From positions 62,001 through 126,000 of IMG/VR virus record IMGVR_UViG_3300036846_000743: a stretch of 64,000 nt of DNA. One strand, given 5' to 3'. A model generated the notes under the pieces. It was not told where the DNA came from, ran no database searches, and saw only the letters and a list, made by a program, of their open reading frames with translations. Within the stretch, counting starts at the first letter, position 1. Each line of letters starts with the position of its first letter. This document shows positions 7,755-64,000 of this stretch, in pieces. The position numbers and the translations under genes are program-made.

Positions 7755-8215
7755 CCTTGCCCCGACTGTAATGCATCCTGCACATGCTTGAGCACGCCAC
7801 CCAGGAAGACGCCTGCGTCGTAGGAATGACCGAACCGCCGGCCCATCGCGTGAGCGATGCACCGGACCGGTGTGGCGTGCCTGGCACGGAAGGCACGCTC
7901 CATGATCGCGATATAGTCGCCCTGGGTCTTGACCGAGATCACGTCGCCGCAGGTCCCAGGATCGGTACCATCCTGGATCAGCTCGGCGTAATTGGTATCG
8001 ATGTTCTCGCGGTCAAAGCCAGCCGTGATGCCGGCGATATCGAGAAGATCCAGCGCCCCCGCATCCTTGTGCTTGGACTGCACGCTGGTCTCAGGGATGT
8101 TCCATTTGCGGGGCCCATAGCCGCGAGATGCTTTACCCTGCTGACCATCCTGCGTGGTCAGGTCCTTGAGATTGTTCGTGAAGACATCGTCGATCTTGCC
8201 CTTGCTCGCCATCAT
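7751..8215 (-). CDS. Hypothetical protein (154 aa)
   Basis: Translationally coupled on both sides (ATGA). Confidence 0.6.
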   Translation of the reverse strand: MMASKGKIDDVFTNNLKDLTTQDGQQGKASRGYGPRKWNIPETSVQSKHKDAGALDLLDIAGITAGFDRENIDTNYAELIQDGTDPGTCGDVISVKTQGDYIAIMERAFRARHATPVRCIAHAMGRRFGHSYDAGVFLGGVLKHVQDALQSGQG

Positions 8216-9003
8216 AGCACCTCCGAGTCCTCGAGTTCGTTCAGCATCCGCTGGATCCGCGCCGCCCGCTGGCTGACGGCCCCCGGCGAGATCCGCAGCC
8301 GGCGAGCGATCTGGGTGGCCGGCAGCTTGGGAGCACCGTTTAAGCCCATGCCGTACTCTAAGATCACCTGGTCATGCGGGTCGAGGTCATGATAGAGAAA
8401 CTGAGCCCTGAGCATAGATCGATCAGGCCCTTCGACGGCCGGCTCGAACCCGCCACCGCCACTCCCTTCTTCATCCTCATCGGACAGAGCGGCCATCCGG
8501 CCTTCAGGTATTGCCGGCCGGTAGCCCCTGATGTGTGCGATGCGTCGCCGGGACAGCCCTATGTGATCTGACAGCTCCATGTCCGACGGATCACGGCCCA
8601 GCTGATCACGCAGCTCGGTCTCGGACTCGGTCAGGTGCTGTTGATCAAGCGCCACCGCTTCAGGAACCTTGATCGTCTGTGCCTGCTGCGCACTGTAGCG
8701 GCGCAGCCCCTGAAGGTGGGCCATCAGGTGGGTCTTGAGGCTGGCCTTGGTCGGGTCATACTTCTTGGCCGCATCCAGGGCAATCATCCGCGCGCGGCTG
8801 CGCATCATAGGGTTGACGTTCCGGCCGCCGTAGACAGAAAGCCCTTCATCGATCACCGGATTGATCGCTTTCAGGAACTCGTCGGACTGGCCGGGACCGG
8901 GATTGGCTGACCACGCATGAAAGGCGGGAGCGTACTGTGACTCGAGCCGGTCCTTGGGCGCGGCGAAGCCGGGCTCGAGCTTGTACGGGGTGAAACCAGG
9001 CAT
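8212..9003 (-). CDS. Phage sigma70-family RNA polymerase sigma factor (263 aa)
   Basis: Region 2-like AAKKYDPTKASLKTHL, region 3 LGRDPSDMELSDHIGLS, region 4 HTH LDPHDQVILEYGMGLNGAPKLPATQIARRLRISPGAVSQRAARIQRML. Confidence 0.88.
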   Translation of the reverse strand: MPGFTPYKLEPGFAAPKDRLESQYAPAFHAWSANPGPGQSDEFLKAINPVIDEGLSVYGGRNVNPMMRSRARMIALDAAKKYDPTKASLKTHLMAHLQGLRRYSAQQAQTIKVPEAVALDQQHLTESETELRDQLGRDPSDMELSDHIGLSRRRIAHIRGYRPAIPEGRMAALSDEDEEGSGGGGFEPAVEGPDRSMLRAQFLYHDLDPHDQVILEYGMGLNGAPKLPATQIARRLRISPGAVSQRAARIQRMLNELEDSEVL

Positions 9004-40326: not shown

Positions 40327-40689
40327 TCACGTTGGCATCTTCGGAGGATCGATTGGCTCGGGCCAGGTCGGATCGACGCCGCCGAGTACGGCGCCGGGAT
40401 AGCCAATGGCCTGGGGATCGAGCACCACGCCCAGTGCCTTGGTGTTGTCGTAGACGAACACCGAAGGTGTCGCGATGATGGTCAGAAGGCCAGCGGATAC
40501 GGCCGCCTCCATCGCCTTGAACTGGCGATTGCTGGACTTGGCGGCCAGCCGATCGACAAGGTTGCCGGCGACCGTCAGCTGCTCCTGGGGAGCCATGGTC
40601 TTACCATGAGGCGGGATGAAGCTGAAAATGATCTCCCGCCCGCTGGTGTTCTGGATCGTGGTGTAGAGATAATTAAGTGCGGCTGGCAC
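40327..40689 (-). CDS. Hypothetical protein, possibly head-associated (120 aa)
   Basis: GTG start with AAGGAG upstream; downstream of the capsid genes. Confidence 0.6.
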   Translation of the reverse strand: MPAALNYLYTTIQNTSGREIIFSFIPPHGKTMAPQEQLTVAGNLVDRLAAKSSNRQFKAMEAAVSAGLLTIIATPSVFVYDNTKALGVVLDPQAIGYPGAVLGGVDPTWPEPIDPPKMPT

Positions 40690-47412: not shown

Positions 47413-48772
47413 CCTTGCCCCCAGGTGATTGCGTCGCGGTTGGTGGCAGAGGAATGCCGCCGACTTCCCTCAGTCCTTGCTCGGTCTTGACGACGTCACC
47501 TACGTCGAATGGATCGATGGCGCCCTGCTGGAGCCGCTTCCGCAAGAGGCCGCTCATGAGCAAGGGCTGCTGGCTGGCCCGCGGGGCCAGCTGGCTGACG
47601 TCGTTGAATGCATTGAGTACTTCGTCCCGGTGAAAACCTTTGAGGACCGGGTCGTGAGACAGCATCTCCTCAAGCATCGCCCGGGTCTTGATGTCTCGCA
47701 GCGCCTGCTCGTGCTCCGGAGTGGCGATCTGATTGAGCTTGCTCTGGACGAGCTTCTCCTTCTCGGTCGGCACCAGGCTCATGAGCATCGGCGTGGTGAT
47801 GTTGCTGGCCATGAGTGCGTTGAAGTTGGGCCAGAACCCCGTGTCGGCTGCTGCCTTAGTCCCAGGTAAGGGCAGCGGATCTAGGATGGAGCCGCGCGGG
47901 GCCACGACAAAAGGGCGCTCAATCTCCGCAAGAACGGCACCTCGATCGGCCGCTCGCTTTTCATTGTCAGTGACGACCTGGCGGAGCCGGCCCGCCAGGT
48001 CGACCAGTCGCGAGAAGGTGTGATAAGGCTCGCCCATCGCCGAATGGAACCGGCCGGTACCTGCCTGCTTCATCAGGTTAGGGCGAGTGCGACGAAGCTG
48101 GTTGTAGACCGCCACGCCCTCTCTGCCGAAGAGGGTCTCGACGTTCTCGCGAACGTCGTATATCGACAGGTTGCCAGGTGTGGCGAAGTAGTCGGCTAAC
48201 TTGGCGAAGCCATCCATGATCTGGTGCTGAACCCGCACCGTCTCCATACGATCCGCCTCTTCGGCCTGAGCGGCCTTCTGGCGGGCAATTACGACGCGTT
48301 CGCCAGCCTGCTCGTCGCGGACCGTCGGGTAGGCCGGGACCGGCTTGTCGGCCAGTCGCCAGTCGGTCGCTGCCGCCGCTTTCTCCATCTGGGCCTCCTG
48401 TGAGGCCCGGACGTACCACGACGGCGACAGCGAATAGGCGACATGGACTCCGGACTCGCGCTCGACCGCGGCGGCTGACTTGACCTGGGATGGGTACAGC
48501 CGCTCGAGGATCGCCGGCGCGTCGGCGATCGGGAAGTCCGCTGCCTTGTCCAGCAGCGAAGAGTGCGACTCCCGGTGCCGGGTGGTCCGGCCCGTGTTGT
48601 AAGCAGCGACCATGAGGCCGATGTGGCCAGGCGGGATTGCACGCTGGGATGCCACCTTGACGATGGCATCGTCGGGATCGGTGCCCCTGTTGACCAGATC
48701 AACGATGTTGTCGAGGGCTTCGCGTAGTCGCGATTCGCCCTCCTTGGTCATCCTCGGCATCATCCTGGGCAT
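47378..48772 (-). CDS. Hypothetical protein (464 aa), K-x-A motifs
   Basis: Long ORF with good RBS; VKVAS, DKAAD, VKSAA, EKAAA, MKQAG, EKRAA, TKAAA. Confidence 0.7.
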   Translation of the reverse strand: MPRMMPRMTKEGESRLREALDNIVDLVNRGTDPDDAIVKVASQRAIPPGHIGLMVAAYNTGRTTRHRESHSSLLDKAADFPIADAPAILERLYPSQVKSAAAVERESGVHVAYSLSPSWYVRASQEAQMEKAAAATDWRLADKPVPAYPTVRDEQAGERVVIARQKAAQAEEADRMETVRVQHQIMDGFAKLADYFATPGNLSIYDVRENVETLFGREGVAVYNQLRRTRPNLMKQAGTGRFHSAMGEPYHTFSRLVDLAGRLRQVVTDNEKRAADRGAVLAEIERPFVVAPRGSILDPLPLPGTKAAADTGFWPNFNALMASNITTPMLMSLVPTEKEKLVQSKLNQIATPEHEQALRDIKTRAMLEEMLSHDPVLKGFHRDEVLNAFNDVSQLAPRASQQPLLMSGLLRKRLQQGAIDPFDVGDVVKTEQGLREVGGIPLPPTATQSPGGKGGSASTSVLAK

Positions 48773-50215: not shown

Positions 50216-52807
50216 CTAGTCGTTGGTATCGCTCTTGAAGTCGGTCCGCTGCATGGCCGCCTCGGGATCAGCCTCGACCGTCTTCTGCTTCAGATCCAGT
50301 ACCAGGTCACCCATGTCCTCGAACGAGTTTCTGAGCATGTCCTCCAGCTCGGGCACGTGGCTCTTGCCGTACCGTTCTTCGAATGCCTCACGGTGCCAGT
50401 AGAGCTGGAACAAGATCCGGCCGATCCGGTCCATGCCCTTCATGAGATCGCCCAGGTAACGATCCGTGAGCTGGTCGTCCCGGGTGGTCTTCAGGAGGCT
50501 CCCCAGCATGGACGTATCGAAGATCTCGCGCTGGCCAGTGGCGGCTGCTTCAGTTGCGGCCTGGGCCGCGCCGGGGTCCGGGCTGGCGGAATTGTTATTA
50601 CGCCATGGCGGATCGGGGTCCAGGTTCGTGTTGGGCCGCTGTAGCTCCCGATTGGCCGGGTCGGGAAACATGCCATCGACCGGGATGGACTCCGACTGCG
50701 GGTCCTGCGACGGGTAGTCGGGGTTCATGAAGTTGCCCGAGCTGTAAGTAGGGTCCGGAATGGCCGGCGCGGTCGGTCCCTCGTCGGTCATGTATGGCCC
50801 CCTGGCCTGCTTGACCCAGGGGGCATACTCGACCCGGAATTCCAGCGCAGGTCCGGGCTTCTTGAAGCGGTTCTCCTCGGCCATCTTGAGCATGTTCCGG
50901 GCGACGCCTTCGGTGAAGCCGTGATCACGCACCAGATGCACGATCGCCTGCTTCTCGGTCATGGATCGCCTGCCGTTGACCGCAGCCCGGCTGCCGTCGA
51001 AAGCAATTGCGATGCGATGATGCGGGATCGTCGAGCCGACCTTGTCGCGCCACATGCCCATCTCGATGCTCATGACGTGGGCCGTGCTGACCGGCGGCGT
51101 CTTGCTCTCACCCTTGCCGCCGGTCAGGCTCTTGATCGGCCGGGTGACCTTGGTCAGGTCCTCCTCGGGCACGTCCCACTGATCATCGTCATAGTCGGCT
51201 TTCTCGACCGTGAAGAGCTTGGAGCCCTTGGGCATGAACAGATCACCCATGCGGCTTCGTACTTCAGAACCAGTCGGAGCGCCGAGATGAATTCGTTCGC
51301 CGTCGTTCCAGCGATCGTAGAAGTCAACGGGATCAGAAAGCCTTGACTTGTAGTACGACCACAGCGTGATGCCTCTATGCGATGCTGGCCGTGGTCGGGC
51401 CGCGAACATATCGAACCGGACGTTCAACATCTTGTAGCCTTCGTTGCTGCCAACGCTCCCCTCGACGATGAATGGCAGCGTACCGTCGGGCCGGCCCGGC
51501 CCGACGACGATGTACTGGCCGTCGCTGTCACCAGTCAGTGTGTCAGCATCCGGCAGGCTCTCAACCCAGTTCTTCCAGTCTTCGTCGGAGTACTGCTTCG
51601 CCGCCCAGAGATAGGACGCGTGGACATTGATCCAGCCCTTGGGCTCACCTTCGACTCGTGCCACTGTAGCGAAGACCTTGCGGCCGTCAGGCCCATGCGG
51701 CCCGATGATCACCAGCATCTTCTCGAGCACGTCAGGCTTGACCAGGATGTCGTAGAGCCCGGTCGTGTCAGGGTTGACCATGGCCTGCCGCATCTGGACC
51801 TTGTAGGCGACGGACTTGTCCGCGACCTCGCGCTGGTCCTTGATCAGCATGCCGTTTTCAAGCAGGTTCTCGGTATCGGGCACGGTCAAGGTCTTGGGGA
51901 GCTTCGAGAGCGCGTTCGGGTTGTAAGTGTAGACCTGGAGTGATCCCTTCTTGATCGGATGCTCTGGACCAACATCGCCCAGCACGGAATCACCGCGTGC
52001 CCATCCCGGCAGCGGACGGTACGGCGGTACGTCGAGCCCGGACAGGACCGACACCGCTGCGGCAGTTTTCTCACGCTTGAGATCAGCCAGCAAGTCCTGG
52101 ATCAGCTTCAGGTCGTAAAACTGATCGAGACCGCGGGCGATCCCCGGATATGTCTGAGCGTACTTGAGCAGTGCGCGAACAGTCTTGATACCGCCTTCCT
52201 TGAGCAGCGTGGGCAGGGTGCGCACGTCCTTGTAGCGGGGATCGGTGTAAGGGTTCGTGGTCGCGGCGTAGGCCAGGGCCGGCAATCCCTGCTGGAGCCA
52301 GCCGGGCATGGCCGAGGCGAACTTGCTTGGCGAGTGCACGATGCGGCTTAACGTGGGCGCCCGCACGCCGATACGCCGTAGGTCCTTGTGCACGCCTTCG
52401 CCCAGGGAGAGCGGCTTCTTCTTGAGCAGATAGTTGATCCAGTTCTCTTTCAAGGGCACGAACTGGTCATCGTTCTTAATGTAGAGTAGCTCGTTCCCTT
52501 TCAGGTCTCCGTCGATGAAGAAGACGGGGGCATACAGGATCTGGGAACCAACCTTGAAGCCACGCACGCCGACGGCCTTTGAATTGTCTTCATTGCGGTC
52601 GAGCAGCTGGAAGCCGACTTCGTAGTCGAGCAGCCCGGGCGCTTTGTCCTTGAGATAAGCATGAGCCAGATTCGCAAGCGCTTGTTCATACGGTTGGTCT
52701 TGACCATCGCCACCAAGCTCCGCGTGTTTGACAATGTGACTCTGAACTGCTGCTCGCCAGCGGGCTACTTCACTCCGTCCCCGTTGGCGATCAATGATCG
52801 TGGGCAT
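50216..52807 (-). CDS. Large hypothetical protein (863 aa), likely virion-internal
   Basis: Long ORF with AAGGAGG RBS; VKHAE, SKFAS, EKTAA, VKQAR motifs. Confidence 0.75.
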   Translation of the reverse strand: MPTIIDRQRGRSEVARWRAAVQSHIVKHAELGGDGQDQPYEQALANLAHAYLKDKAPGLLDYEVGFQLLDRNEDNSKAVGVRGFKVGSQILYAPVFFIDGDLKGNELLYIKNDDQFVPLKENWINYLLKKKPLSLGEGVHKDLRRIGVRAPTLSRIVHSPSKFASAMPGWLQQGLPALAYAATTNPYTDPRYKDVRTLPTLLKEGGIKTVRALLKYAQTYPGIARGLDQFYDLKLIQDLLADLKREKTAAAVSVLSGLDVPPYRPLPGWARGDSVLGDVGPEHPIKKGSLQVYTYNPNALSKLPKTLTVPDTENLLENGMLIKDQREVADKSVAYKVQMRQAMVNPDTTGLYDILVKPDVLEKMLVIIGPHGPDGRKVFATVARVEGEPKGWINVHASYLWAAKQYSDEDWKNWVESLPDADTLTGDSDGQYIVVGPGRPDGTLPFIVEGSVGSNEGYKMLNVRFDMFAARPRPASHRGITLWSYYKSRLSDPVDFYDRWNDGERIHLGAPTGSEVRSRMGDLFMPKGSKLFTVEKADYDDDQWDVPEEDLTKVTRPIKSLTGGKGESKTPPVSTAHVMSIEMGMWRDKVGSTIPHHRIAIAFDGSRAAVNGRRSMTEKQAIVHLVRDHGFTEGVARNMLKMAEENRFKKPGPALEFRVEYAPWVKQARGPYMTDEGPTAPAIPDPTYSSGNFMNPDYPSQDPQSESIPVDGMFPDPANRELQRPNTNLDPDPPWRNNNSASPDPGAAQAATEAAATGQREIFDTSMLGSLLKTTRDDQLTDRYLGDLMKGMDRIGRILFQLYWHREAFEERYGKSHVPELEDMLRNSFEDMGDLVLDLKQKTVEADPEAAMQRTDFKSDTND

Positions 52808-54388: not shown

Positions 54389-56365
54389 TCAACTGCCGCC
54401 ACGCCAGGTAGCAGCGCCTCCGTGGACCGGCATTTTGAGTCGGTCCACTGATGCATCATGACCATCCAGGTCGTCGTTGTCGACATCCCAGGATCCGTCG
54501 TCAGGATCCCAACCCTTGGTCAGGCCCTGCCGCCCGAAGTGAGTGCGCTCGGCCAGCGCGGGCACGTAGCTCGTACCGGCAACGTCACTGGTAGCGCCCC
54601 GATGCGCCGCCTGCAACGTGGCCTTCTCAAGGCCGGACCCCAGATGCCGGGTCATGAAGTCGGGATCATGCTGGAGGTTGTACATGCCCCGGACCATCAT
54701 GGGTTCGAAGGGCGGCGGCTCGTCATGGACTTCCAGATTGTTCACTCCGAACTCCCTGAGTTCGGGAAGCATCCCCTGGCGGACCTTGGTGCCTATGGTG
54801 TGATGCAGGACCGGACGCTCGAGATACTTGCCCACAGCCGATGGCAGCTCGACCACACGGGACCCTTCCCGGGGACGCCAGTTGTTCTCGACGTGTGAGT
54901 ACGGCACCACGTCATCCTCCACGTGATCACCGAATTCGTCCGTGACCCGAACGTGATCGATCAGGCCGCGGGCCAGCAACTCGACATTGCGCCGGTGGCT
55001 GCTCATGCCCGAGTTACGATAGGCGTCTCCGAATGCCCCGACGAAATACCGGCGGCCCTCGCCAATGCCTTTGTGCCGAACGACTTCGGCAGGGTTGGGT
55101 ATCCCGTCCGAGAGCACGTCGCCAGCCTCGACACTATCGCCGATCTCGACCTTCGGGTCCATACCGGCGGGGACGTAGTGCTGCTCGGATCCGACCATGA
55201 CGTACTTGCCGCCCTGGGGAGCGTCAGTGATCGCCGAGACCTTGCCGTCGAGCTGAGCATGCGTGGCCCCGCCCTTGAAGGTCTTGGGCACCTGAATTAA
55301 CTGGTTGATATGGGCAAACCCAGAGACGGCTTTGTCGGCCCCGGCGACGCCGCCGGTATGCCGGGCCGAAAGCTGGCCCTGGGAGAGCTTCTCCGAAACG
55401 GCCTGCGCAGCAGCCAGGCCCACGTAGTCGCCCAGCGGGGGTAAACCGCCCCGCTCCCGGATGCCGACATCCCGGGCATAGACGCCTCCCTGGGGCGGCC
55501 CGCCAATCATGGGCGATCGGACCAGGATACGACCATGCCCCTGAGCCTGGAGGTCCTTGAGGACCTTGGGCGTCAGGGTCGTATTTCGCTTGTAGGGGCC
55601 GATGGGGCGAGCCAGCAGGGCACCTTCGTTATCGGGATCATCGGTCGCGACTGGCAGGCCGCGCACCGAGGTCGTATCGTCAGGGCCGTCGTGATCGGTC
55701 ACGATCAGACGGTGCACGACCTGGTTGAGCTGCTTGCTCAGGAAGCCAGCGTCCTGGGTGGCAAACTTGGTCGAGACAACGCCCTTGCGAGCACCGAAGG
55801 CACCGGCCCAGTACTCGGCAGGCGAAAGACCATGAGGGTACGAGTTCAGGACAGGGATCGGGATCGGCCGGTCGTGATGATCGACGTACATCAGGTCGGA
55901 GCCCATGAAAGACTTCAGGTTCGTCTTGCTGCCCCGCGCGCCTGAGAGCACCTGGCGGACAAACGGATTGTCAGCCGCCTTGGCCTCGTCGAAGATCGCG
56001 TTCTCCATGTGATCACGGTACTTGTCCACCGCGGCAACGATCGCCTGCTCTTTTTGGTCGTCAGTTGTCCGGGTGTTGGCCTGGATCATCTGGACTTCGC
56101 GGCGAATCTGTTCCTTGATCCGCTCGCCAGTCTTGCTGGGCCGCATGTCTTCCAGAGCGACCGAGAAGCCGCCGGTGGAATATGCTACATCACGACCAAC
56201 GTCAGAAAGCCGCTTGGCAACGTCGCGGTAGATCTCGGGGCGGCGCTCGGCGATGTCCTGGAAAAGTTGCCTGATACCTTTGGCGTCGAGAACGCGATTG
56301 TAGTCTTTGAGTTCAGGCGGTAAACTTTCGTTCACCATCAAATTCCCTAGAGTTGTCCGGAGCAT
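54389..56365 (-). CDS. rpoC: RNA polymerase beta' subunit, C-terminal part
   Basis: SGARG; bridge helix EYWAGAFGARKGVVSTKFATQDAGFLSKQL; trigger loop AAQAVSEKLSQGQLSARHTGG; RRNVELLARGL. Start 56365 (or 56392). Confidence 0.92.
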   Translation of the reverse strand: MLRTTLGNLMVNESLPPELKDYNRVLDAKGIRQLFQDIAERRPEIYRDVAKRLSDVGRDVAYSTGGFSVALEDMRPSKTGERIKEQIRREVQMIQANTRTTDDQKEQAIVAAVDKYRDHMENAIFDEAKAADNPFVRQVLSGARGSKTNLKSFMGSDLMYVDHHDRPIPIPVLNSYPHGLSPAEYWAGAFGARKGVVSTKFATQDAGFLSKQLNQVVHRLIVTDHDGPDDTTSVRGLPVATDDPDNEGALLARPIGPYKRNTTLTPKVLKDLQAQGHGRILVRSPMIGGPPQGGVYARDVGIRERGGLPPLGDYVGLAAAQAVSEKLSQGQLSARHTGGVAGADKAVSGFAHINQLIQVPKTFKGGATHAQLDGKVSAITDAPQGGKYVMVGSEQHYVPAGMDPKVEIGDSVEAGDVLSDGIPNPAEVVRHKGIGEGRRYFVGAFGDAYRNSGMSSHRRNVELLARGLIDHVRVTDEFGDHVEDDVVPYSHVENNWRPREGSRVVELPSAVGKYLERPVLHHTIGTKVRQGMLPELREFGVNNLEVHDEPPPFEPMMVRGMYNLQHDPDFMTRHLGSGLEKATLQAAHRGATSDVAGTSYVPALAERTHFGRQGLTKGWDPDDGSWDVDNDDLDGHDASVDRLKMPVHGGAATWRGGS

Positions 56366-56401
56366 GGCAACGTCACACCCCCGCTTCACCATACGCTTTC
56401 G

Positions 56402-56656
56402 TCAGACTTGCCAGTCGTAGTCCTTGACGCCGTTAGGCTTGATCGTGTCGATCTGGACCCGGTCGAGGCCGAGATTGGCCAGGATGCGGTTGAAGTGCGG
56501 GTCCCTGGCGTGCGCCGCCGTGACATGCGTTCCGTTGGTATCGCCCACCCATTCCACGACCACGGCCAGCGGGGTCCCGTCACCGCTCTTGACGACCACG
56601 CGGGTGGCCGGGATCACCAGCGGATTGCCCAGGCCGTCGAGGATCTCCAGGATCAT
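56402..56656 (-). CDS. Hypothetical protein (84 aa)
   Basis: ATGA-coupled to the upstream gene. Confidence 0.65.
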   Translation of the reverse strand: MILEILDGLGNPLVIPATRVVVKSGDGTPLAVVVEWVGDTNGTHVTAAHARDPHFNRILANLGLDRVQIDTIKPNGVKDYDWQV

Positions 56657-57456
56657 GCATCACCACTTTTGAGCGATCGGGACAGGGCAGCCAGGGCGCC
56701 CGCCTTGCTGCGAACCGTACGTAATTCATCGAGCGTGTACTCATTACCGACATCGAACGACTGGCGGCGATGATCCTCGCCGAGAATTCTGGAGATCCCT
56801 TGAACACCCGAACCCGCTCTGACCGAGGCCGCCTTGGCGCCGCCGCCAATGGGGCCCTGGTCGGGAGTCAGCGGCGGAATTGGGCCAGGACCAGCCCCGC
56901 CACCCGGAGGCGCACCGCCGCCCGGAGGCGCGCCGCCGCCCGGAGGCATACCGCCTGGTCCCGGCATGGTGGTACCACCACCGCCAGGTGCTGCCTGCTC
57001 CGCCTGTGCCTGTTGCTGCATCATCGGATCAGGCGGCGGACCGACCACGATCGATGGCGGCACCTGGACGTTCAGGGCCTCGCAGACCTTCACGAGCAGG
57101 AACTGGATCGTCCAGAGCTTGGTGTCCAGTAATTGCTGCTCGGCCTTCTTGCCGCCACCCTTGCCAGCAGGCCCGCCGGCCATGCCGCCGGCGCCTTGAG
57201 CTGCCTGGGTGATCTGGGCCAGCGTCGCCGGATCGAGCGGTCCTGGAGGCGGAGCTGGTGCTCCACCCATAGCACCGCCCCCGCCGGCCATCGCGGCTGG
57301 ATCCGGCATGGGCGGCGGAGCGCCGCCAGCCATTGCGCCCGGATCAGGGGGCTGCGCGACCTTCTCGAACTCGTTGTTGTCCAGTACGTCGTTGTCGACC
57401 CGCCATCGTGCTACTGCCCGCAGGTGTGGATTGATGAGCGGAAGTGTCGCTGACAT
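56653..57456 (-). CDS. Pro/Gly/Ala-rich hypothetical protein (267 aa)
   Basis: Low-complexity PPGGG repeats; EKVAQ and AKAAS motifs. Confidence 0.65.
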   Translation of the reverse strand: MSATLPLINPHLRAVARWRVDNDVLDNNEFEKVAQPPDPGAMAGGAPPPMPDPAAMAGGGGAMGGAPAPPPGPLDPATLAQITQAAQGAGGMAGGPAGKGGGKKAEQQLLDTKLWTIQFLLVKVCEALNVQVPPSIVVGPPPDPMMQQQAQAEQAAPGGGGTTMPGPGGMPPGGGAPPGGGAPPGGGAGPGPIPPLTPDQGPIGGGAKAASVRAGSGVQGISRILGEDHRRQSFDVGNEYTLDELRTVRSKAGALAALSRSLKSGDA

Positions 57457-57826: not shown

Positions 57827-59815
57827 TCAGCGATCCATAACGATCTCGACGGGCTGATCTGCGCTAATATCACCCCGCCGGTAAGCCGCCAGGGCATCGG
57901 CCTTGGTAGCGAAAGTCCGCGGTCGCTTACCGGACCGTCCGGCCGTGGCCGCGTAGAGCCCGGCGGCGTATTCGCGGCTCGGAAGTTGATGCGCTTTGAA
58001 AGATGCTGCCGCAAGCAGGTTCCGGCTGGGAAGCATCTTCTCATAAGCGTCCCTGACCGCTTCCTTGGTAACCGGGACGTGGTACTGCATGGCGTCGCCA
58101 TCGAAGTCAGCGCCGAAGCCGGTGACGATCATGGGCGACACGTGCAGGGTCTCGCCCTGCTCGAGCCTCGGGCGGAAAGCCATGATCCCGTACCGGTGCA
58201 GGACTGGTGCTCTGTTGATGATCACCGGCCGGGAGTCCATCTCGTGCATCATCTCGGCGCGCGCCGACGGCTTACGCTCCTTGACCGCCCTGACGGCATC
58301 GATACGAGCCATGCCGCGCTGAACTAACCGGCGAACGATAAAAGGCTGGTAGACATCCCAGGCCCGGTTCTCCGGCAGGCCGACCTGATCCATGTCCAGA
58401 TCGGGATTGGGCACTATAGTCGCTCGACCCACCAGGTCCGTGGCGCTGGAGAGCAGCTTGCGCTGGACCATGCCCGTCTTGGGGCTATTCCCGAAAACCT
58501 GCTTGAGCACGCCCCGGACCCCTCGCTCCTGGTTCTTGGGATGAAGCGGATCACCGAGGCCAGTCACAGCCTTCAGGGTCTGGTAAGCAGCCAGCCGCTC
58601 CTCCGAGACGTCGTTGACCTTGGTCTTCATGTCCCGGAGGTTATCACGAGCATCGATCAGTTCTTTGTAAAGATAATTGGCATCAGCCACCATGGGCAGC
58701 TTGGAGCCAGCCATCGTCGAGACCGGCCGGAACATAGGGGGCAGCACAGGGGCTTTATCGAGCATCCAGTCCCTGGGATGCAGCCCGGCTTTCTGGGCAC
58801 CCTTCAGGTAGCCCAGCTTGCGCACGGCCGTATCACGGGCACCCTTACGTCCTGAGCGAATATCAGCTCGGGCCTGGTTGATGGCCTGATCGAGCTTGAT
58901 CCCATCCAGCGCCTTCGAGATCGCTTCGGAGCCCGTCCGGCCATTGAGTTCCTCCTTGCCGGACAGCACGGACAGGAACTTCTTCTCGGTCATGCCCAGC
59001 ATCCGCCGGATCGGTTCTTCCATCGCTGGGTTGGGTAAGGGCTCGGCCAGCTTAATATGCGCCCACCTGTTTCCCCCGTGACCACCGGTCAAGGCTTCGT
59101 CGAACAAGCCTCCTTTCAGGGGCTTCAGGCCCTCTTTCCAGTCGACCGTGTCGCCGTGGGTGATCTCGCGGTCGCCAGATAATTCATCGACATCTTTCCC
59201 TGAAAGAGCCATCGCATTCAGCCTGGTACCTTGGCGGACGACGTTAATTCCGCCGGCCTTGAGCATGTTGATGAACTTGTCATAGACCATGGGCGTCTTG
59301 GGCGTCGGCAGCGGCCGGCCGGACATGAACTGCGCCCAGAATTCGGGATGCTGCTGGCCCCGAACGGCACCAGCATCACGAAGCACTTCGGTAGCTCCAT
59401 GCGAGAGCAGCGCGTTCACGTCCATGAGTGATATTCTCTTGGAGCCGGCTTCGCCGCCACGTGCTGGGGCCCCCTCGGCCGTGTAGCCGCCGGTGCCGCG
59501 GCCCTGGCCCTTGGATTCGCTGGTGTGGTGAAGTTTCATGAACCAGCGGTTGCCCGTAAGTATGCGCGGGATATCGCGCCCGGCGACCGGATCCTTGATC
59601 GTCTCGGCCGATGTCATGCCATGCCGGGCCAGCTCCTGGATGGCCCATTCGTTGTAGTCCCGGCCGTCGAAGTCAGGAACACGATAGGGCCTGCCGGTCT
59701 TCTCGGCAATCTTGCCCAGAGCGGCCTCGATGCTCTGGGCCGGGTTCGTGCGGGTGATCACACCTAAAGGATTCAACAATACTTCATACGGCCGACCTTT
59801 CATATCTTGTGGCAT
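57827..59815 (-). CDS. rpoC: Fused RNA polymerase beta C-terminus + beta' N-terminal (catalytic) part; conserved coding extends upstream to 59857 without a start codon
   Basis: beta: MPQD...VLLNPLGVITRTNPAQ, MKLHH...KGQGR, KRISLMDVNALLSHGA. beta': GGLFD, VLPPMFRP, DLVGRATIVPNPDLDMDQVGLP, NRAPVLHR, GADFDGD at 58094-58114. Confidence 0.93.
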   Translation of the reverse strand: MPQDMKGRPYEVLLNPLGVITRTNPAQSIEAALGKIAEKTGRPYRVPDFDGRDYNEWAIQELARHGMTSAETIKDPVAGRDIPRILTGNRWFMKLHHTSESKGQGRGTGGYTAEGAPARGGEAGSKRISLMDVNALLSHGATEVLRDAGAVRGQQHPEFWAQFMSGRPLPTPKTPMVYDKFINMLKAGGINVVRQGTRLNAMALSGKDVDELSGDREITHGDTVDWKEGLKPLKGGLFDEALTGGHGGNRWAHIKLAEPLPNPAMEEPIRRMLGMTEKKFLSVLSGKEELNGRTGSEAISKALDGIKLDQAINQARADIRSGRKGARDTAVRKLGYLKGAQKAGLHPRDWMLDKAPVLPPMFRPVSTMAGSKLPMVADANYLYKELIDARDNLRDMKTKVNDVSEERLAAYQTLKAVTGLGDPLHPKNQERGVRGVLKQVFGNSPKTGMVQRKLLSSATDLVGRATIVPNPDLDMDQVGLPENRAWDVYQPFIVRRLVQRGMARIDAVRAVKERKPSARAEMMHEMDSRPVIINRAPVLHRYGIMAFRPRLEQGETLHVSPMIVTGFGADFDGDAMQYHVPVTKEAVRDAYEKMLPSRNLLAAASFKAHQLPSREYAAGLYAATAGRSGKRPRTFATKADALAAYRRGDISADQPVEIVMDR

Positions 59816-59858
59816 CTCATGATCAGGAATGATTGCGGAAACTACGCCTTTATCGCCT

Positions 59859-62800
59859 TCAACCGTACCGGCCGCTGTTCAGCGACCAGTACGTTTTGTC
59901 CTCTCTTTTGCAGTAGACGATATGGTTGGGGACTGTGACGCAGTAAACGTCACCCGAATAGTCGACCATCCTTTCTTCGTTCGCCTCGTAGATCCCGATC
60001 CGGCCATGTTTGAACCAAGGACGCAAATGCTTCCGATTGACACGACCCCGCCAATGCGGCTGTTTCTGCCAGTTATCCGTCCGCTCCGTCCGTTTGAGCG
60101 TCACGGCCCAGCCTAGTTTCAAGCAAATGATCTGGATATCGACAGCTAGCTGTTCAGACGAAGAACCGTATTCCCATGCATCGCCTTGATGACCATCGCC
60201 GGCCATGTAAGCGTCAAAGAAAATGCGGAGCTGCCGCGGGCACAACTCCTGAACGTAGTCTGGAATGTACTTGGTATAGCTATCGCCTAACAGCGCCAGA
60301 ACCCCGTAGAGCCATTTGCTGGTAATCTCGAACCGCTGATCGTCGCTATTGTAGGTGAAACGAATCCCTAGCCGAACTAGGCTATCGTAGATCGCTTGCC
60401 AGTGCGGTGAGTTACGGAACTGGGCAATCTTCACCTTGAAGCTACCATTGGCCTTATTGTAGTCGCACCAACCTTCAGCCAAGTAATAGCCCAGAAACTC
60501 GAGCCAGTCGTCCATTCGGACCTGCTCATAATACTGCTCGCGCGATGTGTATTGCGCGTATGGCTCGAACTTGATCCATTCTTGCTCGATGCCAATCCAG
60601 CGGCAGTCTTTCTTGAAATTCCATTCGCCTTTCGACTCGTAAAATGCCTGTGCCGTGATCGGCTGATAGGACTTGCCTGGCCGTGCTACCCAGAGTCGGT
60701 GCTCGGGCGTGACCAGCATGTTGATGTGCTTGGTGTTCAGGTAGTACATCAATCCATCATGACGATACCGATGCAGATGAGTCGGCTGCTGATATTCCAG
60801 CGCATCCGTCTCAGGGTTGAGAGTTGTCAGCTCGTCATCGGTCACAACCTCCGCAACCGGTTTCCAACCCCGACGGGTCAGAAGCCAGGTCGCCGGGTCG
60901 TAGCACATCTTGTCGCCGACTTCCATGGGGTTCAGGCTCTTGACCGAGACCACGATACCCTTGGGCGTCTTCTCGACGTCGGTAACTTCGCCAGGTGCAT
61001 GATGGTTCCAGGTCTCAGAGTGATCGGCCCACGCCGCTTGCCGGCCCCGGGAGAGCGACCCGTGGGTCCGCTCGCGTTCCTTGACGGCCAGGATCAGCGG
61101 ATCGCCGTGATTGACGATCGTGCCCGGCCTGACCACGCCCTCGTCGTCAATGGTATCAAGCATCTTGCGGTCGAATACACCTGGAAAAGTCGCGATGTGG
61201 GCGCTCTTGCCCGGCTTGACCTCGCCGTCGTGCTCGAGCGAGTGCTGATACATGTGCTCCGAGGAGAACCGCTTGGCCATCGCCTCGCTGATGACGATCG
61301 CGTCCTCGAAGTTCAGGCCGCGGAAGGGGATGTAGGCCGTGCGGGCGTTCTGACCCAGGGCCGATACACCGTGTTCGTCGGTGTAGTTGGACCTGGCCAG
61401 CAGGCTGCCGGCAGCGATCCGGTCGCCAGGCTTGACTACCGGAGTCTGGTGAATATAGGTTTTCCGGTTGTAAGGATAGTTCACGTAAAGCTCGTGCTCG
61501 CGGGGCTTGCCGTCGTCGCCCTGGACGGTGATCTTGCCGTCCTCCACCCTGGTGACGATACCGGGAGCGTCACTGTGCATGGCGCCGAAATGCCGGCCAT
61601 AGCGGGACTCGTAACTGTCACCCTGGCTCCCCCTGACGCCGGCCTGCACCAGCGGGGCCTGGGGATCCTTCACCGGCAGGGCCTGGGTGATCATGCGGCC
61701 GGCCATGACCTCACGCTGCCCCTTGACGGTCGACTTCATCGGCACCAGGTTCGAGATCGAGCTGAAGGCATCGTCCATGTTGGGCAGCTCGTACTGGACC
61801 TGGTTCCGCGGCACGTCGCGGGTCTTGCCGCCGGCCAGCGCCGAGACGTAGGGCTTGACCGTCTGTAGCTCGCCCGGAAAGGCAATCACCGAGTCGGTCA
61901 GGTCCTGCGCGCTGCGGTGTTCGAGCCGGCCAGTACGCACGTTGCGAAACGGCGCGTAGAGCCGGCCGTCGGCCCCCTTGAATGTCCCCTGGGCCACACG
62001 GCCGTCGACACCGGCATGAAAGCTCTCCGGGGTGACCAGGGGATCGATCAGGCCGAAGTGCGACGGCTGAACGTTGCGAGCTTCGGCGGGGATTGCATCA
62101 AGCGAAGGAATCCCTCCAGTGCCCAGCCGGCTGACCCGGGCCTGCTGGTCGAAGATCATGGCCGGGTTAATTCCCTCGGTGGGCTGGCCCAGGCCGCTGG
62201 ACTGGATAGCGGCGTTGATATTCCGGGTCAGTAACTCGGCCGGGATGTGCTTGAGGCTCCCGGTCATGGACGCTTTCCAGAGGACCTTGCCCAGAAGCAT
62301 GCGGTCCTTGCCGACCCGCTCGGATAACAGATCTTCGGGACCCATGGCGTACATGTAGGCCAGGTGATCACGGTCATCGGGTTCTGCTTCTTGTTTGTTT
62401 ATCGCAGCCAGTTTCCTGGTGGTATCCAGCATCTGATCCAGCGAGACCTTGTCGTACGGCTTACCGAGGGTCCGCCTGGTGACCTCTGGGTCGAGCTTCA
62501 TGGCCTCGAACGCTTCGCGGACTTCCTGCTCCTGGGTCTTGGTCGGATCAGGTTTGCGAACCAACCGGCTATGCAGCTTACCGATGACCGATGGATCATC
62601 CTTGAGCATGTTGGGCTGGTAGAGATCACCCCAGGCTTCGCGAAGCTGCTTGTCGCTGGCCCCCATGGCATGGAGCAAGGACGTCAAGGGCATCTTGGAC
62701 TGACCGACTTTGAGGCGGAACACGCCGGTCTCGGGCTCCATGAAGATCCGGTGCGCGGCACCCTGGCCGGGCATGACGTTCACATGGGCTTCGAGTTCGC

Positions 62801-63329
62801 CGTTGGCCTGGCGGCGAGTAAAGACGCCGGGCCGGAGCCTGAGCTGGTGAGCCAGCGTATATTCGGACCCATTCTGGATAAAAGTCCCGTGATCGGTCAG
62901 GTACGGGATCGTAGCCACGGTGGATCGTTTCTGATCGATGACCGCGCCGGTCGCGTTATCACGCAGCGTCCAGGTGCCCCGGAGCCGGGCCCCCAGACTG
63001 CGGCCTCCCAGGATGGCCTTCTTCCAGTCGGCCTTGCCGTACCGCTGCGCGCCTTCATAGCCGACGTCGTCAAGGGTCAGGGTGTGTCGCTGGTTCGAGA
63101 CCGGCGGGATCTTGCCAGCTGCCTCCTTGACGCGATCGAAGATCCGGCTCCGGATCGCGGCCGCATCGCCAAAGGCACGAAGGCCGGCCGGAGCGTGTGC
63201 CGGCAAGGCGGGTGATCGCTCAACACCCTGTTCCTTGTGCGTGCCGTCGTTGATCCTGCCGTCGCCGTCACCGTCTCGCGGGACGCTGGACAGCGATCCC
63301 AGGGCCGACTCTGCCAGAACGCTAGGCAC
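59859..63329 (-). CDS. rpoB: RNA polymerase beta subunit, N-terminal/major part, intein-containing
   Basis: GTFIQNGSEY...LRPGVF, SRLGTGG...ARNVQPSHFGLIDPLVTPE, MAGRMITQA, LGQNARTAYIPFRGLNFEDAIVISE, VGDKM. GTG 63329 with AAGGAGG. Confidence 0.93.
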   Translation of the reverse strand: MPSVLAESALGSLSSVPRDGDGDGRINDGTHKEQGVERSPALPAHAPAGLRAFGDAAAIRSRIFDRVKEAAGKIPPVSNQRHTLTLDDVGYEGAQRYGKADWKKAILGGRSLGARLRGTWTLRDNATGAVIDQKRSTVATIPYLTDHGTFIQNGSEYTLAHQLRLRPGVFTRRQANGELEAHVNVMPGQGAAHRIFMEPETGVFRLKVGQSKMPLTSLLHAMGASDKQLREAWGDLYQPNMLKDDPSVIGKLHSRLVRKPDPTKTQEQEVREAFEAMKLDPEVTRRTLGKPYDKVSLDQMLDTTRKLAAINKQEAEPDDRDHLAYMYAMGPEDLLSERVGKDRMLLGKVLWKASMTGSLKHIPAELLTRNINAAIQSSGLGQPTEGINPAMIFDQQARVSRLGTGGIPSLDAIPAEARNVQPSHFGLIDPLVTPESFHAGVDGRVAQGTFKGADGRLYAPFRNVRTGRLEHRSAQDLTDSVIAFPGELQTVKPYVSALAGGKTRDVPRNQVQYELPNMDDAFSSISNLVPMKSTVKGQREVMAGRMITQALPVKDPQAPLVQAGVRGSQGDSYESRYGRHFGAMHSDAPGIVTRVEDGKITVQGDDGKPREHELYVNYPYNRKTYIHQTPVVKPGDRIAAGSLLARSNYTDEHGVSALGQNARTAYIPFRGLNFEDAIVISEAMAKRFSSEHMYQHSLEHDGEVKPGKSAHIATFPGVFDRKMLDTIDDEGVVRPGTIVNHGDPLILAVKERERTHGSLSRGRQAAWADHSETWNHHAPGEVTDVEKTPKGIVVSVKSLNPMEVGDKMCYDPATWLLTRRGWKPVAEVVTDDELTTLNPETDALEYQQPTHLHRYRHDGLMYYLNTKHINMLVTPEHRLWVARPGKSYQPITAQAFYESKGEWNFKKDCRWIGIEQEWIKFEPYAQYTSREQYYEQVRMDDWLEFLGYYLAEGWCDYNKANGSFKVKIAQFRNSPHWQAIYDSLVRLGIRFTYNSDDQRFEITSKWLYGVLALLGDSYTKYIPDYVQELCPRQLRIFFDAYMAGDGHQGDAWEYGSSSEQLAVDIQIICLKLGWAVTLKRTERTDNWQKQPHWRGRVNRKHLRPWFKHGRIGIYEANEERMVDYSGDVYCVTVPNHIVYCKREDKTYWSLNSGRYG
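59877..60905 (-). mobile_element. Intein with LAGLIDADG homing endonuclease (343 aa) at GDKM|S of beta
   Basis: Block A CYDPATWLLTRRGW; block B LVTPEHRLWV; LAGLIDADG FLGYYLAEG and FFDAYMAGDG; block F/G VYCVTVPNH...WSLN followed by +1 Ser; lower GC. Confidence 0.95.
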
Positions 63330-63339
63330 AGGGCCCTCC

Positions 63340-64000
63340 TTACTTGGGGTGCGGCTGTACCAGTTGCTGTCCAGCGACGCGGCCCAGCGATCCAGCCAGG
63401 CTGGGTAATTGCGGCGGGGACGGCTCTGCCGGCTTCTCGGGCTTCGCCGGCTTGCCATCGGTCGGCGTCATGAGCCGGTTCCAGACGGCCATCTGATTGG
63501 CCTTGATCCGGTTCAGGAATTGGTCGGCCGCCTGGCCGACACTGGCGTGCTTCTCTTTCTTCGCCGGCTCCTCGTCTGGTTCCTTCCTGGCCCCGAACGC
63601 ACGGTGCCAGATCGACGGCTTCGGCCGCATGATCGGTGTCGGCATCGGGATCGCCATGATCGGGCTCGGGGCCTGCTCGGCAATCTGGGCCTGCCGCCGC
63701 TTCACTGCCTCCTCGACGGCCTTGTCCTCGGCCGTTGATCTGGCCCAGTGATAACCACCCAGGCCGGCACCCAGCATGAGGCCGCCGCCCAGCGTCAGGG
63801 CACCACCCATAAGCGGACCGTACCAGCCTTCTGCCTGCTTCTCGTAGAGACTGGCCAGCACATCGAGCGAGCTGGGCTTCGGATCTGCCGAAGCCAGCTT
63901 GCGCCGGCCGGCCAGCGCACTCTCGTAGCCCTTGCGCGCCTCTTCCAGCTCACTCTCCTGCTCGGCCGTCCGGGTCTTGTCGAGCAGATAGTCAGTCAGC
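63340..64000 (-). CDS. Glycine-zipper hypothetical protein, 5'-truncated by window edge
   Basis: The track ORF 63340..63861 stays open upstream to base 64000 (LTDYLLDKTRTAEQ...); MGGALTLGGGLMLGAGLGGY; EKQAE and EKHAS motifs. Confidence 0.7.
   Translation of the reverse strand, partial: LTDYLLDKTRTAEQESELEEARKGYESALAGRRKLASADPKPSSLDVLASLYEKQAEGWYGPLMGGALTLGGGLMLGAGLGGYHWARSTAEDKAVEEAVKRRQAQIAEQAPSPIMAIPMPTPIMRPKPSIWHRAFGARKEPDEEPAKKEKHASVGQAADQFLNRIKANQMAVWNRLMTPTDGKPAKPEKPAEPSPPQLPSLAGSLGRVAGQQLVQPHPK

What the first reader, a model, noticed from the sequence alone, without database searches (positions are those of the whole stretch)
58094..59212. Streamlined beta': GADFDGD active site and loss of both zinc sites
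Seen: the catalytic motif is GADFDGD rather than NADFDGD. GGLFDEALTGGHGGNRWAHIKLAEP lacks the four-Cys zinc-binding domain found between GLFC..IFG and MGHIELA in bacteria. In beta'C the second Zn site is also Cys-free (VTDHDG; VRSPMIGGPPQGGVYARDVG). Known: the Asn of NADFDGD (E. coli beta' N458) contributes to ribo/deoxy discrimination, and the ZBD acts in promoter binding and termination. Inference: altered NTP selectivity or promoter and termination behaviour.
Basis: partly seen in the sequence, partly recalled or inferred. Interest (0 to 1): 0.6.

Follow-up and report, generated by a model that had tools for sequence, protein, structure and literature searches.

The report
Cysteine-free, zinc-free jumbo-phage RNA polymerase
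A 226-kb soil phage encodes a bacterial-type RNA polymerase that has lost both zinc sites, has no cysteine, and carries glycine in place of the "universal" active-site asparagine; all three traits are shared across a large, barely studied clade of phage enzymes that is probably carried inside the virion.

Summary
On the minus strand, GADFDGD lies at 58094-58114. The four-Cys zinc-binding domain (ZBD) is replaced by a 12-residue Gly-rich linker at 59060-59095. The four ligands of the second zinc site (Zn2) in beta'C read G, G, Y, D. The exteins hold no cysteine in about 2170 residues, against 1.33% genome-wide.

The window lies in a 226-kb IMG/VR jumbo phage from soil. It has one RNA polymerase (RNAP) set: beta carrying an intein, fused to beta'N, with beta'C separate. 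It also has sigma-like genes and no detectable alpha. The cultured relatives are Salmonella phage Arash and Vibrio phage D181.

Across 82 relatives:
- ZBD is absent in all.
- Zn2 is lost in 75 of 80 beta'C sequences and kept in the deeper branches, so its loss is derived.
- The Asn position is G 52, N 27, A 3, with about 10 switches on the tree.
- R425, the Asp triad, the bridge helix and the trigger-loop Gln and His are kept.

So N-to-G is widespread and tolerated, and a large change in NTP selectivity is unlikely. In Arash these subunits are the most abundant virion proteins, and Arash virion proteins are Cys-poor. My best explanation is an active, zinc-free RNAP adapted to virion packaging.

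In passing: a stop or frameshift insert beside the intein looks like a translational hop.

The parts
59859..63458 (-). beta subunit, N-terminal 4/5 (P0002, 1199 aa as an ORF), interrupted by an intein
   Evidence: Pfam RNA_pol_Rpb2_6 78.4 bits and Rpb2_3. The ORF ends ...GDKM|intein|SGRYG-stop.
59877..60905 (-). LAGLIDADG intein (P0002 residues 852-1194), inserted in the conserved beta motif GDKM|SGRYGDKG
   Evidence: Begins with C852 and ends with Asn before Ser+1. Weak Pfam LAGLIDADG_3 match. Intein-less relatives read GDKMSGRYGDKGVV without interruption.
59852..59864 (-). Recoding site: GGT TGA A GGC GAT. A 7-nt insert (TGAAGGC) after a Gly codon breaks the frame between beta and the following ORF.
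   Evidence: The same letters appear in an independent Logan contig of the soil run. Three IMG/VR contigs carry a 6-nt form, TGAGGT.
57827..59857 (-). beta C-terminus fused to beta' N-terminal half (P0001 from ATG 59815; the frame is open upstream and encodes GDKGVVSAIIPDHE)
   Evidence: Pfam Rpb2_6 C-terminal part, Rpb1_2 83.8 bits, Rpb1_1 below cut-off. In about 70 of 80 relatives beta and beta'N are one ORF of 1460-1500 aa. Arash gp206 has the same fusion.
59060..59095 (-). 12-residue Gly-rich linker (ALTGGHGGNRWA) in place of the four-Cys zinc-binding domain
   Evidence: Alignment with Salmonella rpoC: columns C70, C72, C85 and C88 are gaps in all 82 clade members.
58424..58426 (-). Arg464 of P0001, equivalent to E. 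coli beta' R425 (main 2'-OH reader), conserved
   Evidence: Invariant in 82 of 82 sequences. Coordinates.
58094..58114 (-). Catalytic loop GADFDGD (Gly568 at the N458 position, codon GGC; Asp triad 570, 572, 574)
   Evidence: Asp triad invariant; position 458 is G 52, N 27, A 3.
56653..57456 (-). Gly/Pro-rich 267-aa ORF (P0004) between beta'N and beta'C; a conserved syntenic gene and possible accessory subunit
   Evidence: No Pfam match. tblastn finds homologues just downstream of beta'N in 14 relatives (62% and 56% identity in L011 and L012).
54389..56365 (-). beta' C-terminal half (P0003, probable start M10), with bridge helix (55763-55804) and trigger loop (55349-55384)
   Evidence: Pfam Rpb1_5 67.7 bits and Rpb1_4 26.5 bits. 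phmmer to Streptomyces beta' 4e-37. Start inferred from relatives.
55469..55687 (-). Former second zinc site: G236 (55685-55687), G298 (55499-55501), Y305 (55478-55480), D308 (55469-55471) at the positions of E. coli C814, C888, C895, C898
   Evidence: alignment. The pattern x-G-Y/F-D holds in 75 of 80 IMG/VR beta'C sequences. CCCC is kept in 4 of these and in Arash and D181.
8212..9003 (-). Sigma-like protein, homologue of Arash Gp10 (virion-associated 'sigma factor')
   Evidence: tblastn with Arash gp10, E 8e-10. Sub-threshold Sigma70_r3 and r4 hits. A clearer sigma70-family ORF lies outside the window at G000:C1:20150-21055.

Best explanation
The region encodes the beta' N-terminal half, translationally fused to the beta C-terminus, of the only multisubunit RNA polymerase (RNAP) of an uncultivated 226-kb soil jumbo phage. 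The enzyme is of bacterial type. It belongs to a large clade of phage RNAPs whose cultured members are Salmonella phage Arash and Vibrio phage D181.

It is most likely a fully active, zinc-free and cysteine-free polymerase:
- The catalytic machinery is intact: Asp triad, R425, bridge helix, trigger-loop Gln and His, and the beta Lys motif.
- The N-terminal ZBD was deleted to a short Gly-rich loop in the ancestor of the whole clade.
- The four Zn2 cysteines were later replaced (x, G, Y/F, D) in the window's subclade.
- The NADFDGD Asn is a tolerated two-state site, with Gly more common than Asn.

Inferred driver. In Arash these subunits are the most abundant virion proteins, so the enzyme is probably packaged and delivered with the DNA for early transcription, together with a phage sigma-like factor. 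Virion proteins of this phage group avoid cysteine. Zinc-thiolate sites would be a liability for a protein that is stored outside the cell and probably has to unfold and refold during ejection.

Inferred consequences. [quoted passage not shown] That would make the enzyme less dependent on host termination and antitermination factors. Gly at position 458 relaxes ribose positioning only mildly, because R425 and the trigger-loop Gln remain.

Shown: the anatomy, the conservation pattern, the order of the losses, and cysteine avoidance. Inferred: activity, virion packaging in this particular phage, and the selective reason.
For: - Bacterial-type enzyme. The best solved relatives are bacterial beta' (Thermus 1e-51 for the N half, Streptomyces 4e-37 for the C half). 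Pfam Rpb1_2, Rpb1_4, Rpb1_5 and Rpb2_6 score above their cut-offs.
- Phage context. The window lies in a 226,073-bp virus record with one RNAP set. It shares terminase, portal, sigma-like, baseplate-neighbour and helicase homologues with Arash.
- Clade pattern. 80 IMG/VR loci are 55-84% identical, and most have beta and beta'N as one ORF. ZBD is absent in 82 of 82. R425 and D460, D462, D464 are invariant.
- Zn2. Lost in 75 of 80 beta'C sequences. Kept in Arash, D181, L152-L155 and in the single-ORF beta-beta' of L079, L083 and L087, where the four ligands are almost the only Cys.
- N458 position. G 52, N 27, A 3. About 10 changes on a careful tree, bootstrap range 9-11.
- Cysteine. 0 in about 2170 extein residues against 1.33% genome-wide.
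- Arash virion data. Gp206 and Gp216 are among the most abundant virion proteins by mass spectrometry, and sigma Gp10 is also in virions (PMC10585845).
- Arash cysteine use. Structural proteins defined by mass spectrometry hold 0.45% Cys against 1.51% in other ORFs (P 1.5e-20).
- Literature. N458S has less than a 5-fold effect and R425 is the main determinant (PMC7862312). Thermus delta-ZBD RNAP is active (PMC9908020). AR9 nvRNAP also lacks ZBD (PMC7618050).
Against: - No biochemical data exist for any member of the clade.
- Virion packaging is known only for Arash, which is 33% identical. The Arash authors themselves note that carry-over of an abundant protein is possible.
- The beta gene of this particular genome is interrupted by a stop or frameshift at 59859-59861. 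This copy makes a full enzyme only if the ribosome recodes there.
- AlphaFold gave low confidence (pLDDT below 50) for exactly the two former Zn2 segments. What replaces the zinc is therefore unknown.
- The neighbouring Cys-free large ORFs could not be identified as virion proteins.
- Cysteine avoidance could have other causes.
Confidence: 0.6

Rival explanations
1. One reading: Gly at the N458 position gives the enzyme a substantially altered substrate choice, for example use of dNTPs or sugar-modified NTPs, as a specific adaptation of this phage.
For: N458 contacts the NTP ribose and is described as universally conserved (PMC7862312). N458S also raises intrinsic RNA cleavage (bioRxiv 2024.06.20.599782). 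N-to-G needs two base changes, and no Ser or Asp intermediate is seen in 82 sequences. This hints that both states are selected.
Against: N and G alternate among close relatives (84% identical) and switched about 10 times. R425 and the trigger-loop Gln are conserved. N458S changes selectivity less than 5-fold. No co-varying site was found in beta'N.
Confidence: 0.15
2. The polymerase is a non-virion enzyme for middle or late genes. It lost its zinc sites and cysteines for another reason, such as escaping host or rival factors that dock on the ZBD, resisting thiol- or zinc-directed stress, or zinc scarcity.
For: The genome encodes its own sigma70-family protein, which suits promoter-specific transcription in the cell. 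ZBD is a known docking site in Rho complexes. Virion detection in Arash could be carry-over.
Against: Gp206 is the most abundant protein in gradient-purified Arash virions. Cysteine avoidance is shared with Arash virion proteins. There is only one RNAP set, so early transcription would then depend on the host.
Confidence: 0.2
3. The metal sites persist with non-Cys ligands (His, Asp), so the enzyme is not zinc-free.
For: D308 is invariant at the C898 position (75 of 75). Asp and His occur near the first ligand (VTDHDG).
Against: Three of the four Zn2 positions are G, G and Y/F, which cannot bind metal. The His near ligand 1 is not conserved. The ZBD region is only 10-12 residues long and its His varies.
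Confidence: 0.07
4. The gene set is decaying. Frameshift, intein and lost motifs would mean a non-functional remnant.
For: A stop or frameshift separates beta from beta'N in this genome and is present in the reads-derived contig.
Against: More than 80 relatives keep long open frames and all catalytic residues. The zinc-site losses are clade-wide and old. The insert has a matched Gly-stop-Gly design, also seen in a 6-nt form elsewhere.
Confidence: 0.05

Closest known systems
Salmonella phage Arash Gp206 (beta-beta'N fusion) and Gp216 (beta'C); Vibrio phages D181, D148, D69
   Same: Same architecture: beta fused to beta'N, with beta'C separate. ZBD is absent and a short GG-x-G linker stands in its place. 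The N458 position is not Asn (AADYDGD). Almost Cys-free. The genomes share terminase, portal, sigma-like protein and helicase.
   Different: Only 33% identical. Arash and D181 keep all four Zn2 cysteines, have DYDGD rather than DFDGD, and have no intein at this site. D181 has free-standing homing endonuclease genes instead.
Bacterial RNAP beta' (E. coli/Salmonella RpoC; Thermus and Streptomyces structures)
   Same: Clear sequence homology along the clamp, catalytic loop, bridge helix and trigger loop. R425 and the Asp triad are conserved.
   Different: No ZBD, no Zn2 cysteines, Gly for N458, beta' split near E. coli residues 550-580, fused to beta, and no alpha gene detected.
Engineered Thermus thermophilus delta-ZBD RNAP (PMC9908020)
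   Same: ZBD replaced by a very short linker, and the enzyme stays active.
   Different: A laboratory construct that keeps Zn2 and N458.
phiKZ and AR9 jumbo-phage non-canonical RNAPs
   Same: Phage-encoded multisubunit RNAPs with split subunits and no alpha. AR9 nvRNAP also lacks the ZBD (PMC7618050).
   Different: Those enzymes are far more divergent; no Pseudomonas phiKZ-type record appears among the tblastn hits. They come as two sets of 4-5 polypeptides without sigma homologues (PMC7598289, PMC13282480). Here there is one set, a beta-beta' fusion and sigma-family genes.
mReC: RNAP-encoding Caudovirales of Weinheimer & Aylward 2020 (PMC7481178)
   Same: Metagenomic tailed phages, some over 200 kb, with recognisable beta and beta'.
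   Different: Their screen required a beta' of at least 800 aa and the NADxDGD motif. It would therefore have skipped split, Gly-bearing genes like this one. Membership was not tested.
Natural rpoB-rpoC fusions (Helicobacter, Wolbachia) and the cyanobacterial gamma/beta' split
   Same: Precedents for fusing beta to beta' and for splitting beta' (own knowledge; the gamma subunit 8h3v_E aligns).
   Different: Cellular enzymes that keep both zinc sites and Asn. The split point here lies about 60 residues earlier than in cyanobacteria.

Membership tests
Multisubunit RNAP beta' (bacterial type) | Double-psi beta-barrel with DxDGD metal-binding loop; Pfam Rpb1 domains | tested here: met
   DFDGD at P0001 570-574. 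Rpb1_2 83.8 bits (cut-off 25.3), Rpb1_5 67.7 (28.5), Rpb1_4 26.5 (24.8).
Multisubunit RNAP beta' (bacterial type) | N-terminal four-Cys zinc-binding domain (E. coli C70, C72, C85, C88) | tested here: not met
   A 12-residue linker with no Cys stands in its place. Pfam Rpb1_1 scores 20.4 bits, below the 39.7 cut-off.
Multisubunit RNAP beta' (bacterial type) | Second zinc site (E. coli C814, C888, C895, C898) | tested here: not met
   The aligned residues are G236, G298, Y305 and D308.
Multisubunit RNAP beta' (bacterial type) | Asn of NADFDGD (N458) | tested here: not met
   Gly568, codon GGC.
Multisubunit RNAP beta' (bacterial type) | R425, bridge helix, trigger-loop Gln and His | tested here: met
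   R464 is invariant in the clade. Bridge helix and trigger loop align with Salmonella beta' (SQGQLSARHTGG against TQLTMRTFHIGG).
Arash-like phage RNAP clade (beta-beta'N fusion plus beta'C) | beta C-terminus continuous with beta' N-terminus; beta'C as a separate gene; ZBD-less linker | tested here: met
   P0001 holds Rpb2_6 followed by Rpb1 domains. Relatives have one ORF of 1460-1500 aa. The linker is shared. In the window, beta and beta'N are separated by a 7-nt insert.
Arash-like phage RNAP clade | Presence in virions | not testable with these tools
   Known only for Arash by mass spectrometry (PMC10585845). Indirect support from cysteine avoidance.
phiKZ/AR9-type jumbo-phage RNAPs | Two RNAP sets, each of 4-5 beta/beta' fragments, and no sigma homologue | tested here: not met
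   A single set is present. Sigma70_r2 and r4 ORF in the genome.
Bacterial RNAP core (alpha2-beta-beta'-omega) | alpha subunit gene | tested here: not met
   PF01000 has no match at E<=0.1 in the 226-kb genome. omega was not searched.
mReC clade (Weinheimer & Aylward 2020) | beta' of at least 800 aa with NADxDGD; placement in their RNAP tree | not tested
   Their inclusion filter would not pass this gene. No joint tree was built.

The most novel reading that the evidence does not exclude
This clade would be the first bacterial-type multisubunit RNA polymerase built to be injected: alpha-less, beta-beta' fused, and free of zinc and cysteine so that it survives storage in the virion and passage through the tail. 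The repeated Asn/Gly switching at the "universal" N458 position would mark two functionally different enzyme states, such as different sugar selectivity or proofreading, under alternating selection rather than drift.
Probability: 0.15. Interest if true: 0.8.

Novelty: new variant of a known kind. Interest (0 to 1): 0.55.

Why it matters
Textbook and recent literature treat three features as universal in multisubunit RNA polymerases: the N-terminal zinc-binding domain of beta', the second zinc site, and Asn458. This is a natural, well-populated clade that is still clearly bacterial in type and can be aligned residue by residue. It has dispensed with all three in a resolvable order: ZBD first, Zn2 later, and Asn repeatedly.

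That gives a ready-made set of natural variants for asking what these elements are needed for. It also gives a minimal cysteine-free RNAP scaffold for biochemistry. And it suggests that an Arash-like group of jumbo phages carries a sigma-associated bacterial-type RNAP in the virion, a transcription strategy not covered in current jumbo-phage reviews.

Tried and rejected
- The search for related loci with beta'C alone found nothing, because its peptide patterns were too specific. It worked once I gave an alignment.
- PHROGs, Pfam and tblastn against cultured phages gave nothing for the neighbouring Cys-free large ORFs. Their virion role stays unproven.
- The AlphaFold2 model of beta'C (31-row alignment) had mean pLDDT 65.7. 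It fell below 50 at exactly the former Zn2 segments (model residues 191-229 and 286-314). It cannot say what replaces the zinc, so I ran no fold search.
- A mutual-information scan of beta'N columns against N/G state showed only phylogenetic signal and no clean partner site. beta and beta'C were not scanned.
- I looked for a recombination tract around the N/G codon in 7 closely related N/G pairs. Mismatches were not elevated there, and the lineages are diverged enough for stepwise mutation.
- One IMG/VR pattern scan was wasted on a mistyped pattern.
- I considered reading the in-frame TGA of L064 under a UGA=Gly code and rejected it. The window's version is out of frame, and nothing in the genome shows another code. 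No alternative code was used anywhere.
- A pseudogene reading is rejected on clade-wide conservation.
- Relocated Cys ligands are rejected because there are none.
- I did not use the large protein searches or complex prediction. The conclusions do not rest on absence of relatives or on a claimed contact.
Full report
**1. What is at the coordinates**

The RNA polymerase (RNAP) genes lie on the minus strand:
- A 1199-aa ORF at 59859-63458 is beta, carrying a LAGLIDADG intein.
- A 662-aa ORF at 57827-59815 (P0001) starts with the C-terminal part of beta (Pfam Rpb2_6) and continues into beta' (Rpb1_1 weak; Rpb1_2 83.8 bits).
- A Gly/Pro-rich 267-aa ORF lies at 56653-57456 (P0004).
- beta'C lies at 54389-56392 (P0003; Rpb1_4, Rpb1_5).

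- GADFDGD is P0001 568-574 (58094-58114).
- GGLFDE is P0001 235-240.
- HIKLAEP is P0001 253-259.
- VTDHDG is P0003 231-236.
- VRSPMIGG...YARDVG is P0003 291-310.

**2. Are the zinc sites really gone?**

ZBD. In an alignment with Salmonella RpoC (same numbering as E. coli), about 42 residues carry C70, C72, C85 and C88. Here they are replaced by a 10-12 residue Gly-rich linker.

Zn2. phmmer against solved structures aligns the Zn2 ligands of Streptomyces beta' with G236, G298, Y305 and D308.

Cysteine. P0001 has no cysteine. P0003 has one, at residue 6, before the conserved start. All seven Cys of the beta ORF lie in the intein. The genome-wide frequency in crude ORFs is 1.33%. Zero in about 2170 residues is therefore far beyond chance, at about 2e-13. 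The ligands have not moved elsewhere, and the few His in the linker are not conserved among relatives.

**3. What organism and what enzyme**

The window is bases 62001-126000 of a 226,073-bp IMG/VR virus record that CheckV rates as complete. The only public run holding it is a soil metagenome. The genome has:
- one RNAP set;
- no alpha by Pfam;
- a sigma70-family ORF outside the window;
- a second, weaker sigma-like ORF in the window at 8212-9003, homologous to Arash Gp10.

The closest solved proteins are ordinary bacterial beta' (1e-51 and 4e-37). This is not the highly divergent phiKZ/AR9 type.

Among cultured phages the relatives are Salmonella phage Arash (33% identity over the full length) and Vibrio phages D181, D148 and D69. 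Arash gp206 is a 1525-aa beta-beta'N fusion and gp216 is beta'C. Arash also shares terminase, portal, a baseplate-region structural protein and helicase with this genome.

**4. How general are the three traits?**

IMG/VR holds at least 80 loci that are 55-84% identical to P0001, on contigs up to 235 kb.

- Fusion. In about 70 of them beta and beta'N form one ORF of 1460-1500 aa with 0-2 Cys. Longer ORFs carry inteins.
- ZBD. It is absent in all 82 sequences compared. R425 and the three Asp are invariant.
- N458 position. It is Gly in 52, Asn in 27 and Ala in 3 (Arash, D181, L080).
- Codons. They are GGN against AAY, a two-base change. No Ser or Asp is seen.
- Switches. A careful ML tree of 75 rows needs 10 changes, with a bootstrap range of 9-11; well-supported branches alone force 8-9 (quick tree).
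- Nearest relatives. They differ in state: L011 is N and L012 is G, both 84% identical.
- Recombination. No local tract is visible around the codon.
- Covariation. No co-varying beta'N site was found.

For beta'C, 75 of 80 IMG/VR sequences show x-G-Y/F-D at the Zn2 columns. Four more distant ones (about 45% identity), plus Arash and D181, keep C-C-C-C. The deep-branching L079, L083 and L087 encode beta and the whole of beta' as one ORF of about 2050 aa. They keep Zn2, and its four ligands are almost their only cysteines.

The order of events is therefore:
1. ZBD deletion and general Cys avoidance arose in the clade ancestor.
2. Zn2 was lost later, in the window's subclade.
3. Asn and Gly have toggled throughout.

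**5. Function**

The catalytic elements are conserved: Asp triad, R425, bridge helix and trigger loop with Gln and His. The beta Lys motif is also present, so activity is expected.

- N458S lowers NTP/dNTP selectivity less than 5-fold, whereas R425 is the main determinant (PMC7862312).
- N458S raises intrinsic cleavage (bioRxiv 2024.06.20.599782).
- A Thermus enzyme with ZBD replaced by three alanines is active and still released by Rho (PMC9908020).
- ZBD is described as common to all multisubunit RNAPs except the AR9 nvRNAP (PMC7618050).

Altered interplay with exit-channel factors is plausible but untested.

**6. Why lose zinc and cysteine?**

In gradient-purified Arash virions, Gp206 gave the highest spectral count of all proteins. 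Gp216 and sigma Gp10 were also detected (PMC10585845). I compared Arash ORFs annotated as structural from that mass spectrometry with the other ORFs, over 116 kb of the genome. Cys was 0.45% against 1.51% (Fisher 1.5e-20).

In the window's genome the RNAP sits among several large Cys-free or Cys-poor ORFs of unknown function. The best-supported explanation is that this is a virion-carried polymerase and shares the cysteine avoidance of virion proteins. The zinc-thiolate sites were casualties of that pressure. This step is inference.

**7. Literature position**

Reviews state that jumbo-phage multisubunit RNAPs lack sigma, and that sigma-encoding jumbo phages lack RNAPs (PMC7598289, PMC7824862, PMC13282480). 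This clade has both.

The mReC survey required NADxDGD and a beta' of at least 800 aa (PMC7481178). It would have missed this type.

**8. Noticed beside the finding**

Intein-less relatives read GDKMSGRYGDKGVV. In the window the intein sits between M and S. Fifteen bases after it there is a 7-nt insert: GGT TGA A GGC GAT (59864-59852).
- An independent assembly of the soil run has the same letters at k-mer depth 23.5.
- Three IMG/VR contigs have a near-identical intein 3' end in a host gene that is only 55% identical. They carry a 6-nt form, GGC TGA GGT GAT, which is an in-frame stop.
- A Gly-tRNA hop from GGY to GGY would restore the wild-type protein in both forms. The alternatives are +1 frameshifting in one and read-through in the other.
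- A 13-bp hairpin ends at the take-off codon.
- This recalls hop-over-stop sites, and (from my own knowledge) the T4 gene 60 bypass that travels with a homing endonuclease.

**9. Verdict**

The object is a new variant of a known kind: a bacterial-type RNAP that is naturally free of zinc and cysteine, in an under-described phage clade. The traits are clade-wide rather than unique to this gene.

Noticed in passing
window 59852-59864 (-), with 59877-60905 (-): A 7-nt insert (TGAAGGC) follows a Gly codon, 15 nt downstream of the intein, and puts a stop and frameshift between beta and beta'N. Three IMG/VR contigs (L064, L065, L086) with the same intein site carry a 6-nt form (TGAGGT, an in-frame stop). 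A Gly-tRNA hop from GGY to GGY would give the wild-type SGRYGDKG in both. A 13-bp hairpin ends at the take-off codon. The letters are confirmed in a Logan contig of the soil run.
   Followed up: partly
window 59877-60905 (-): A 343-aa LAGLIDADG intein (Cys1; C-terminal Asn without the penultimate His; Ser+1) is inserted in the conserved beta motif GDKM|SGRYGDKG. Its 3' end is nearly identical in a phage whose host gene is only 55% identical, which suggests horizontal spread. Other relatives carry inteins at other sites (ORFs of 1800-2200 aa).
   Followed up: partly
window 56653-57456 (-): A Gly/Pro-rich 267-aa ORF lies between beta'N and beta'C. Homologues sit in the same position in 14 relatives (conserved core around residues 100-141). 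It may be an extra RNAP subunit or assembly factor. No Pfam match.
   Followed up: partly
window 11914-15780, 43324-44676, 47378-48772, 50216-52807 (all -): Four large ORFs (1288, 450, 464 and 863 aa) have no cysteine at all. None matches Pfam, PHROGs or cultured phages. They may be virion or ejected proteins. Outside the window, a 2977-aa ORF (G000 134681-143614) has only 0.2% Cys.
   Followed up: partly
window 8212-9003 (-) and G000:C1:20150-21055 (outside the window): The genome has two sigma-like genes alongside its own beta-beta'. One is homologous to the virion-associated Arash Gp10. The other has Pfam Sigma70_r2 (25.8 bits, over the 24.0 cut-off) and r4 (22.9, just under 24.1). Reviews say RNAP-encoding jumbo phages lack sigma.
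   Followed up: partly
L079, L083, L087 (IMG/VR relatives): In these deep-branching relatives beta and the complete beta' are one polypeptide of about 2040-2080 aa. It has only 4-5 cysteines, four of which are the Zn2 ligands.
   Followed up: partly
window 5605-7272 (-) and 39018-40406 (-): A Baseplate_J-like protein lies next to the Gp10-like sigma. Separately, one ORF combines a family-2 glycosyltransferase domain with a weak methyltransferase domain match.
   Followed up: no
L006 (Vibrio phage D181): In D181 the beta gene is split by free-standing homing endonuclease genes rather than by an intein. This shows that different mobile elements repeatedly target this RNAP locus.
   Followed up: no
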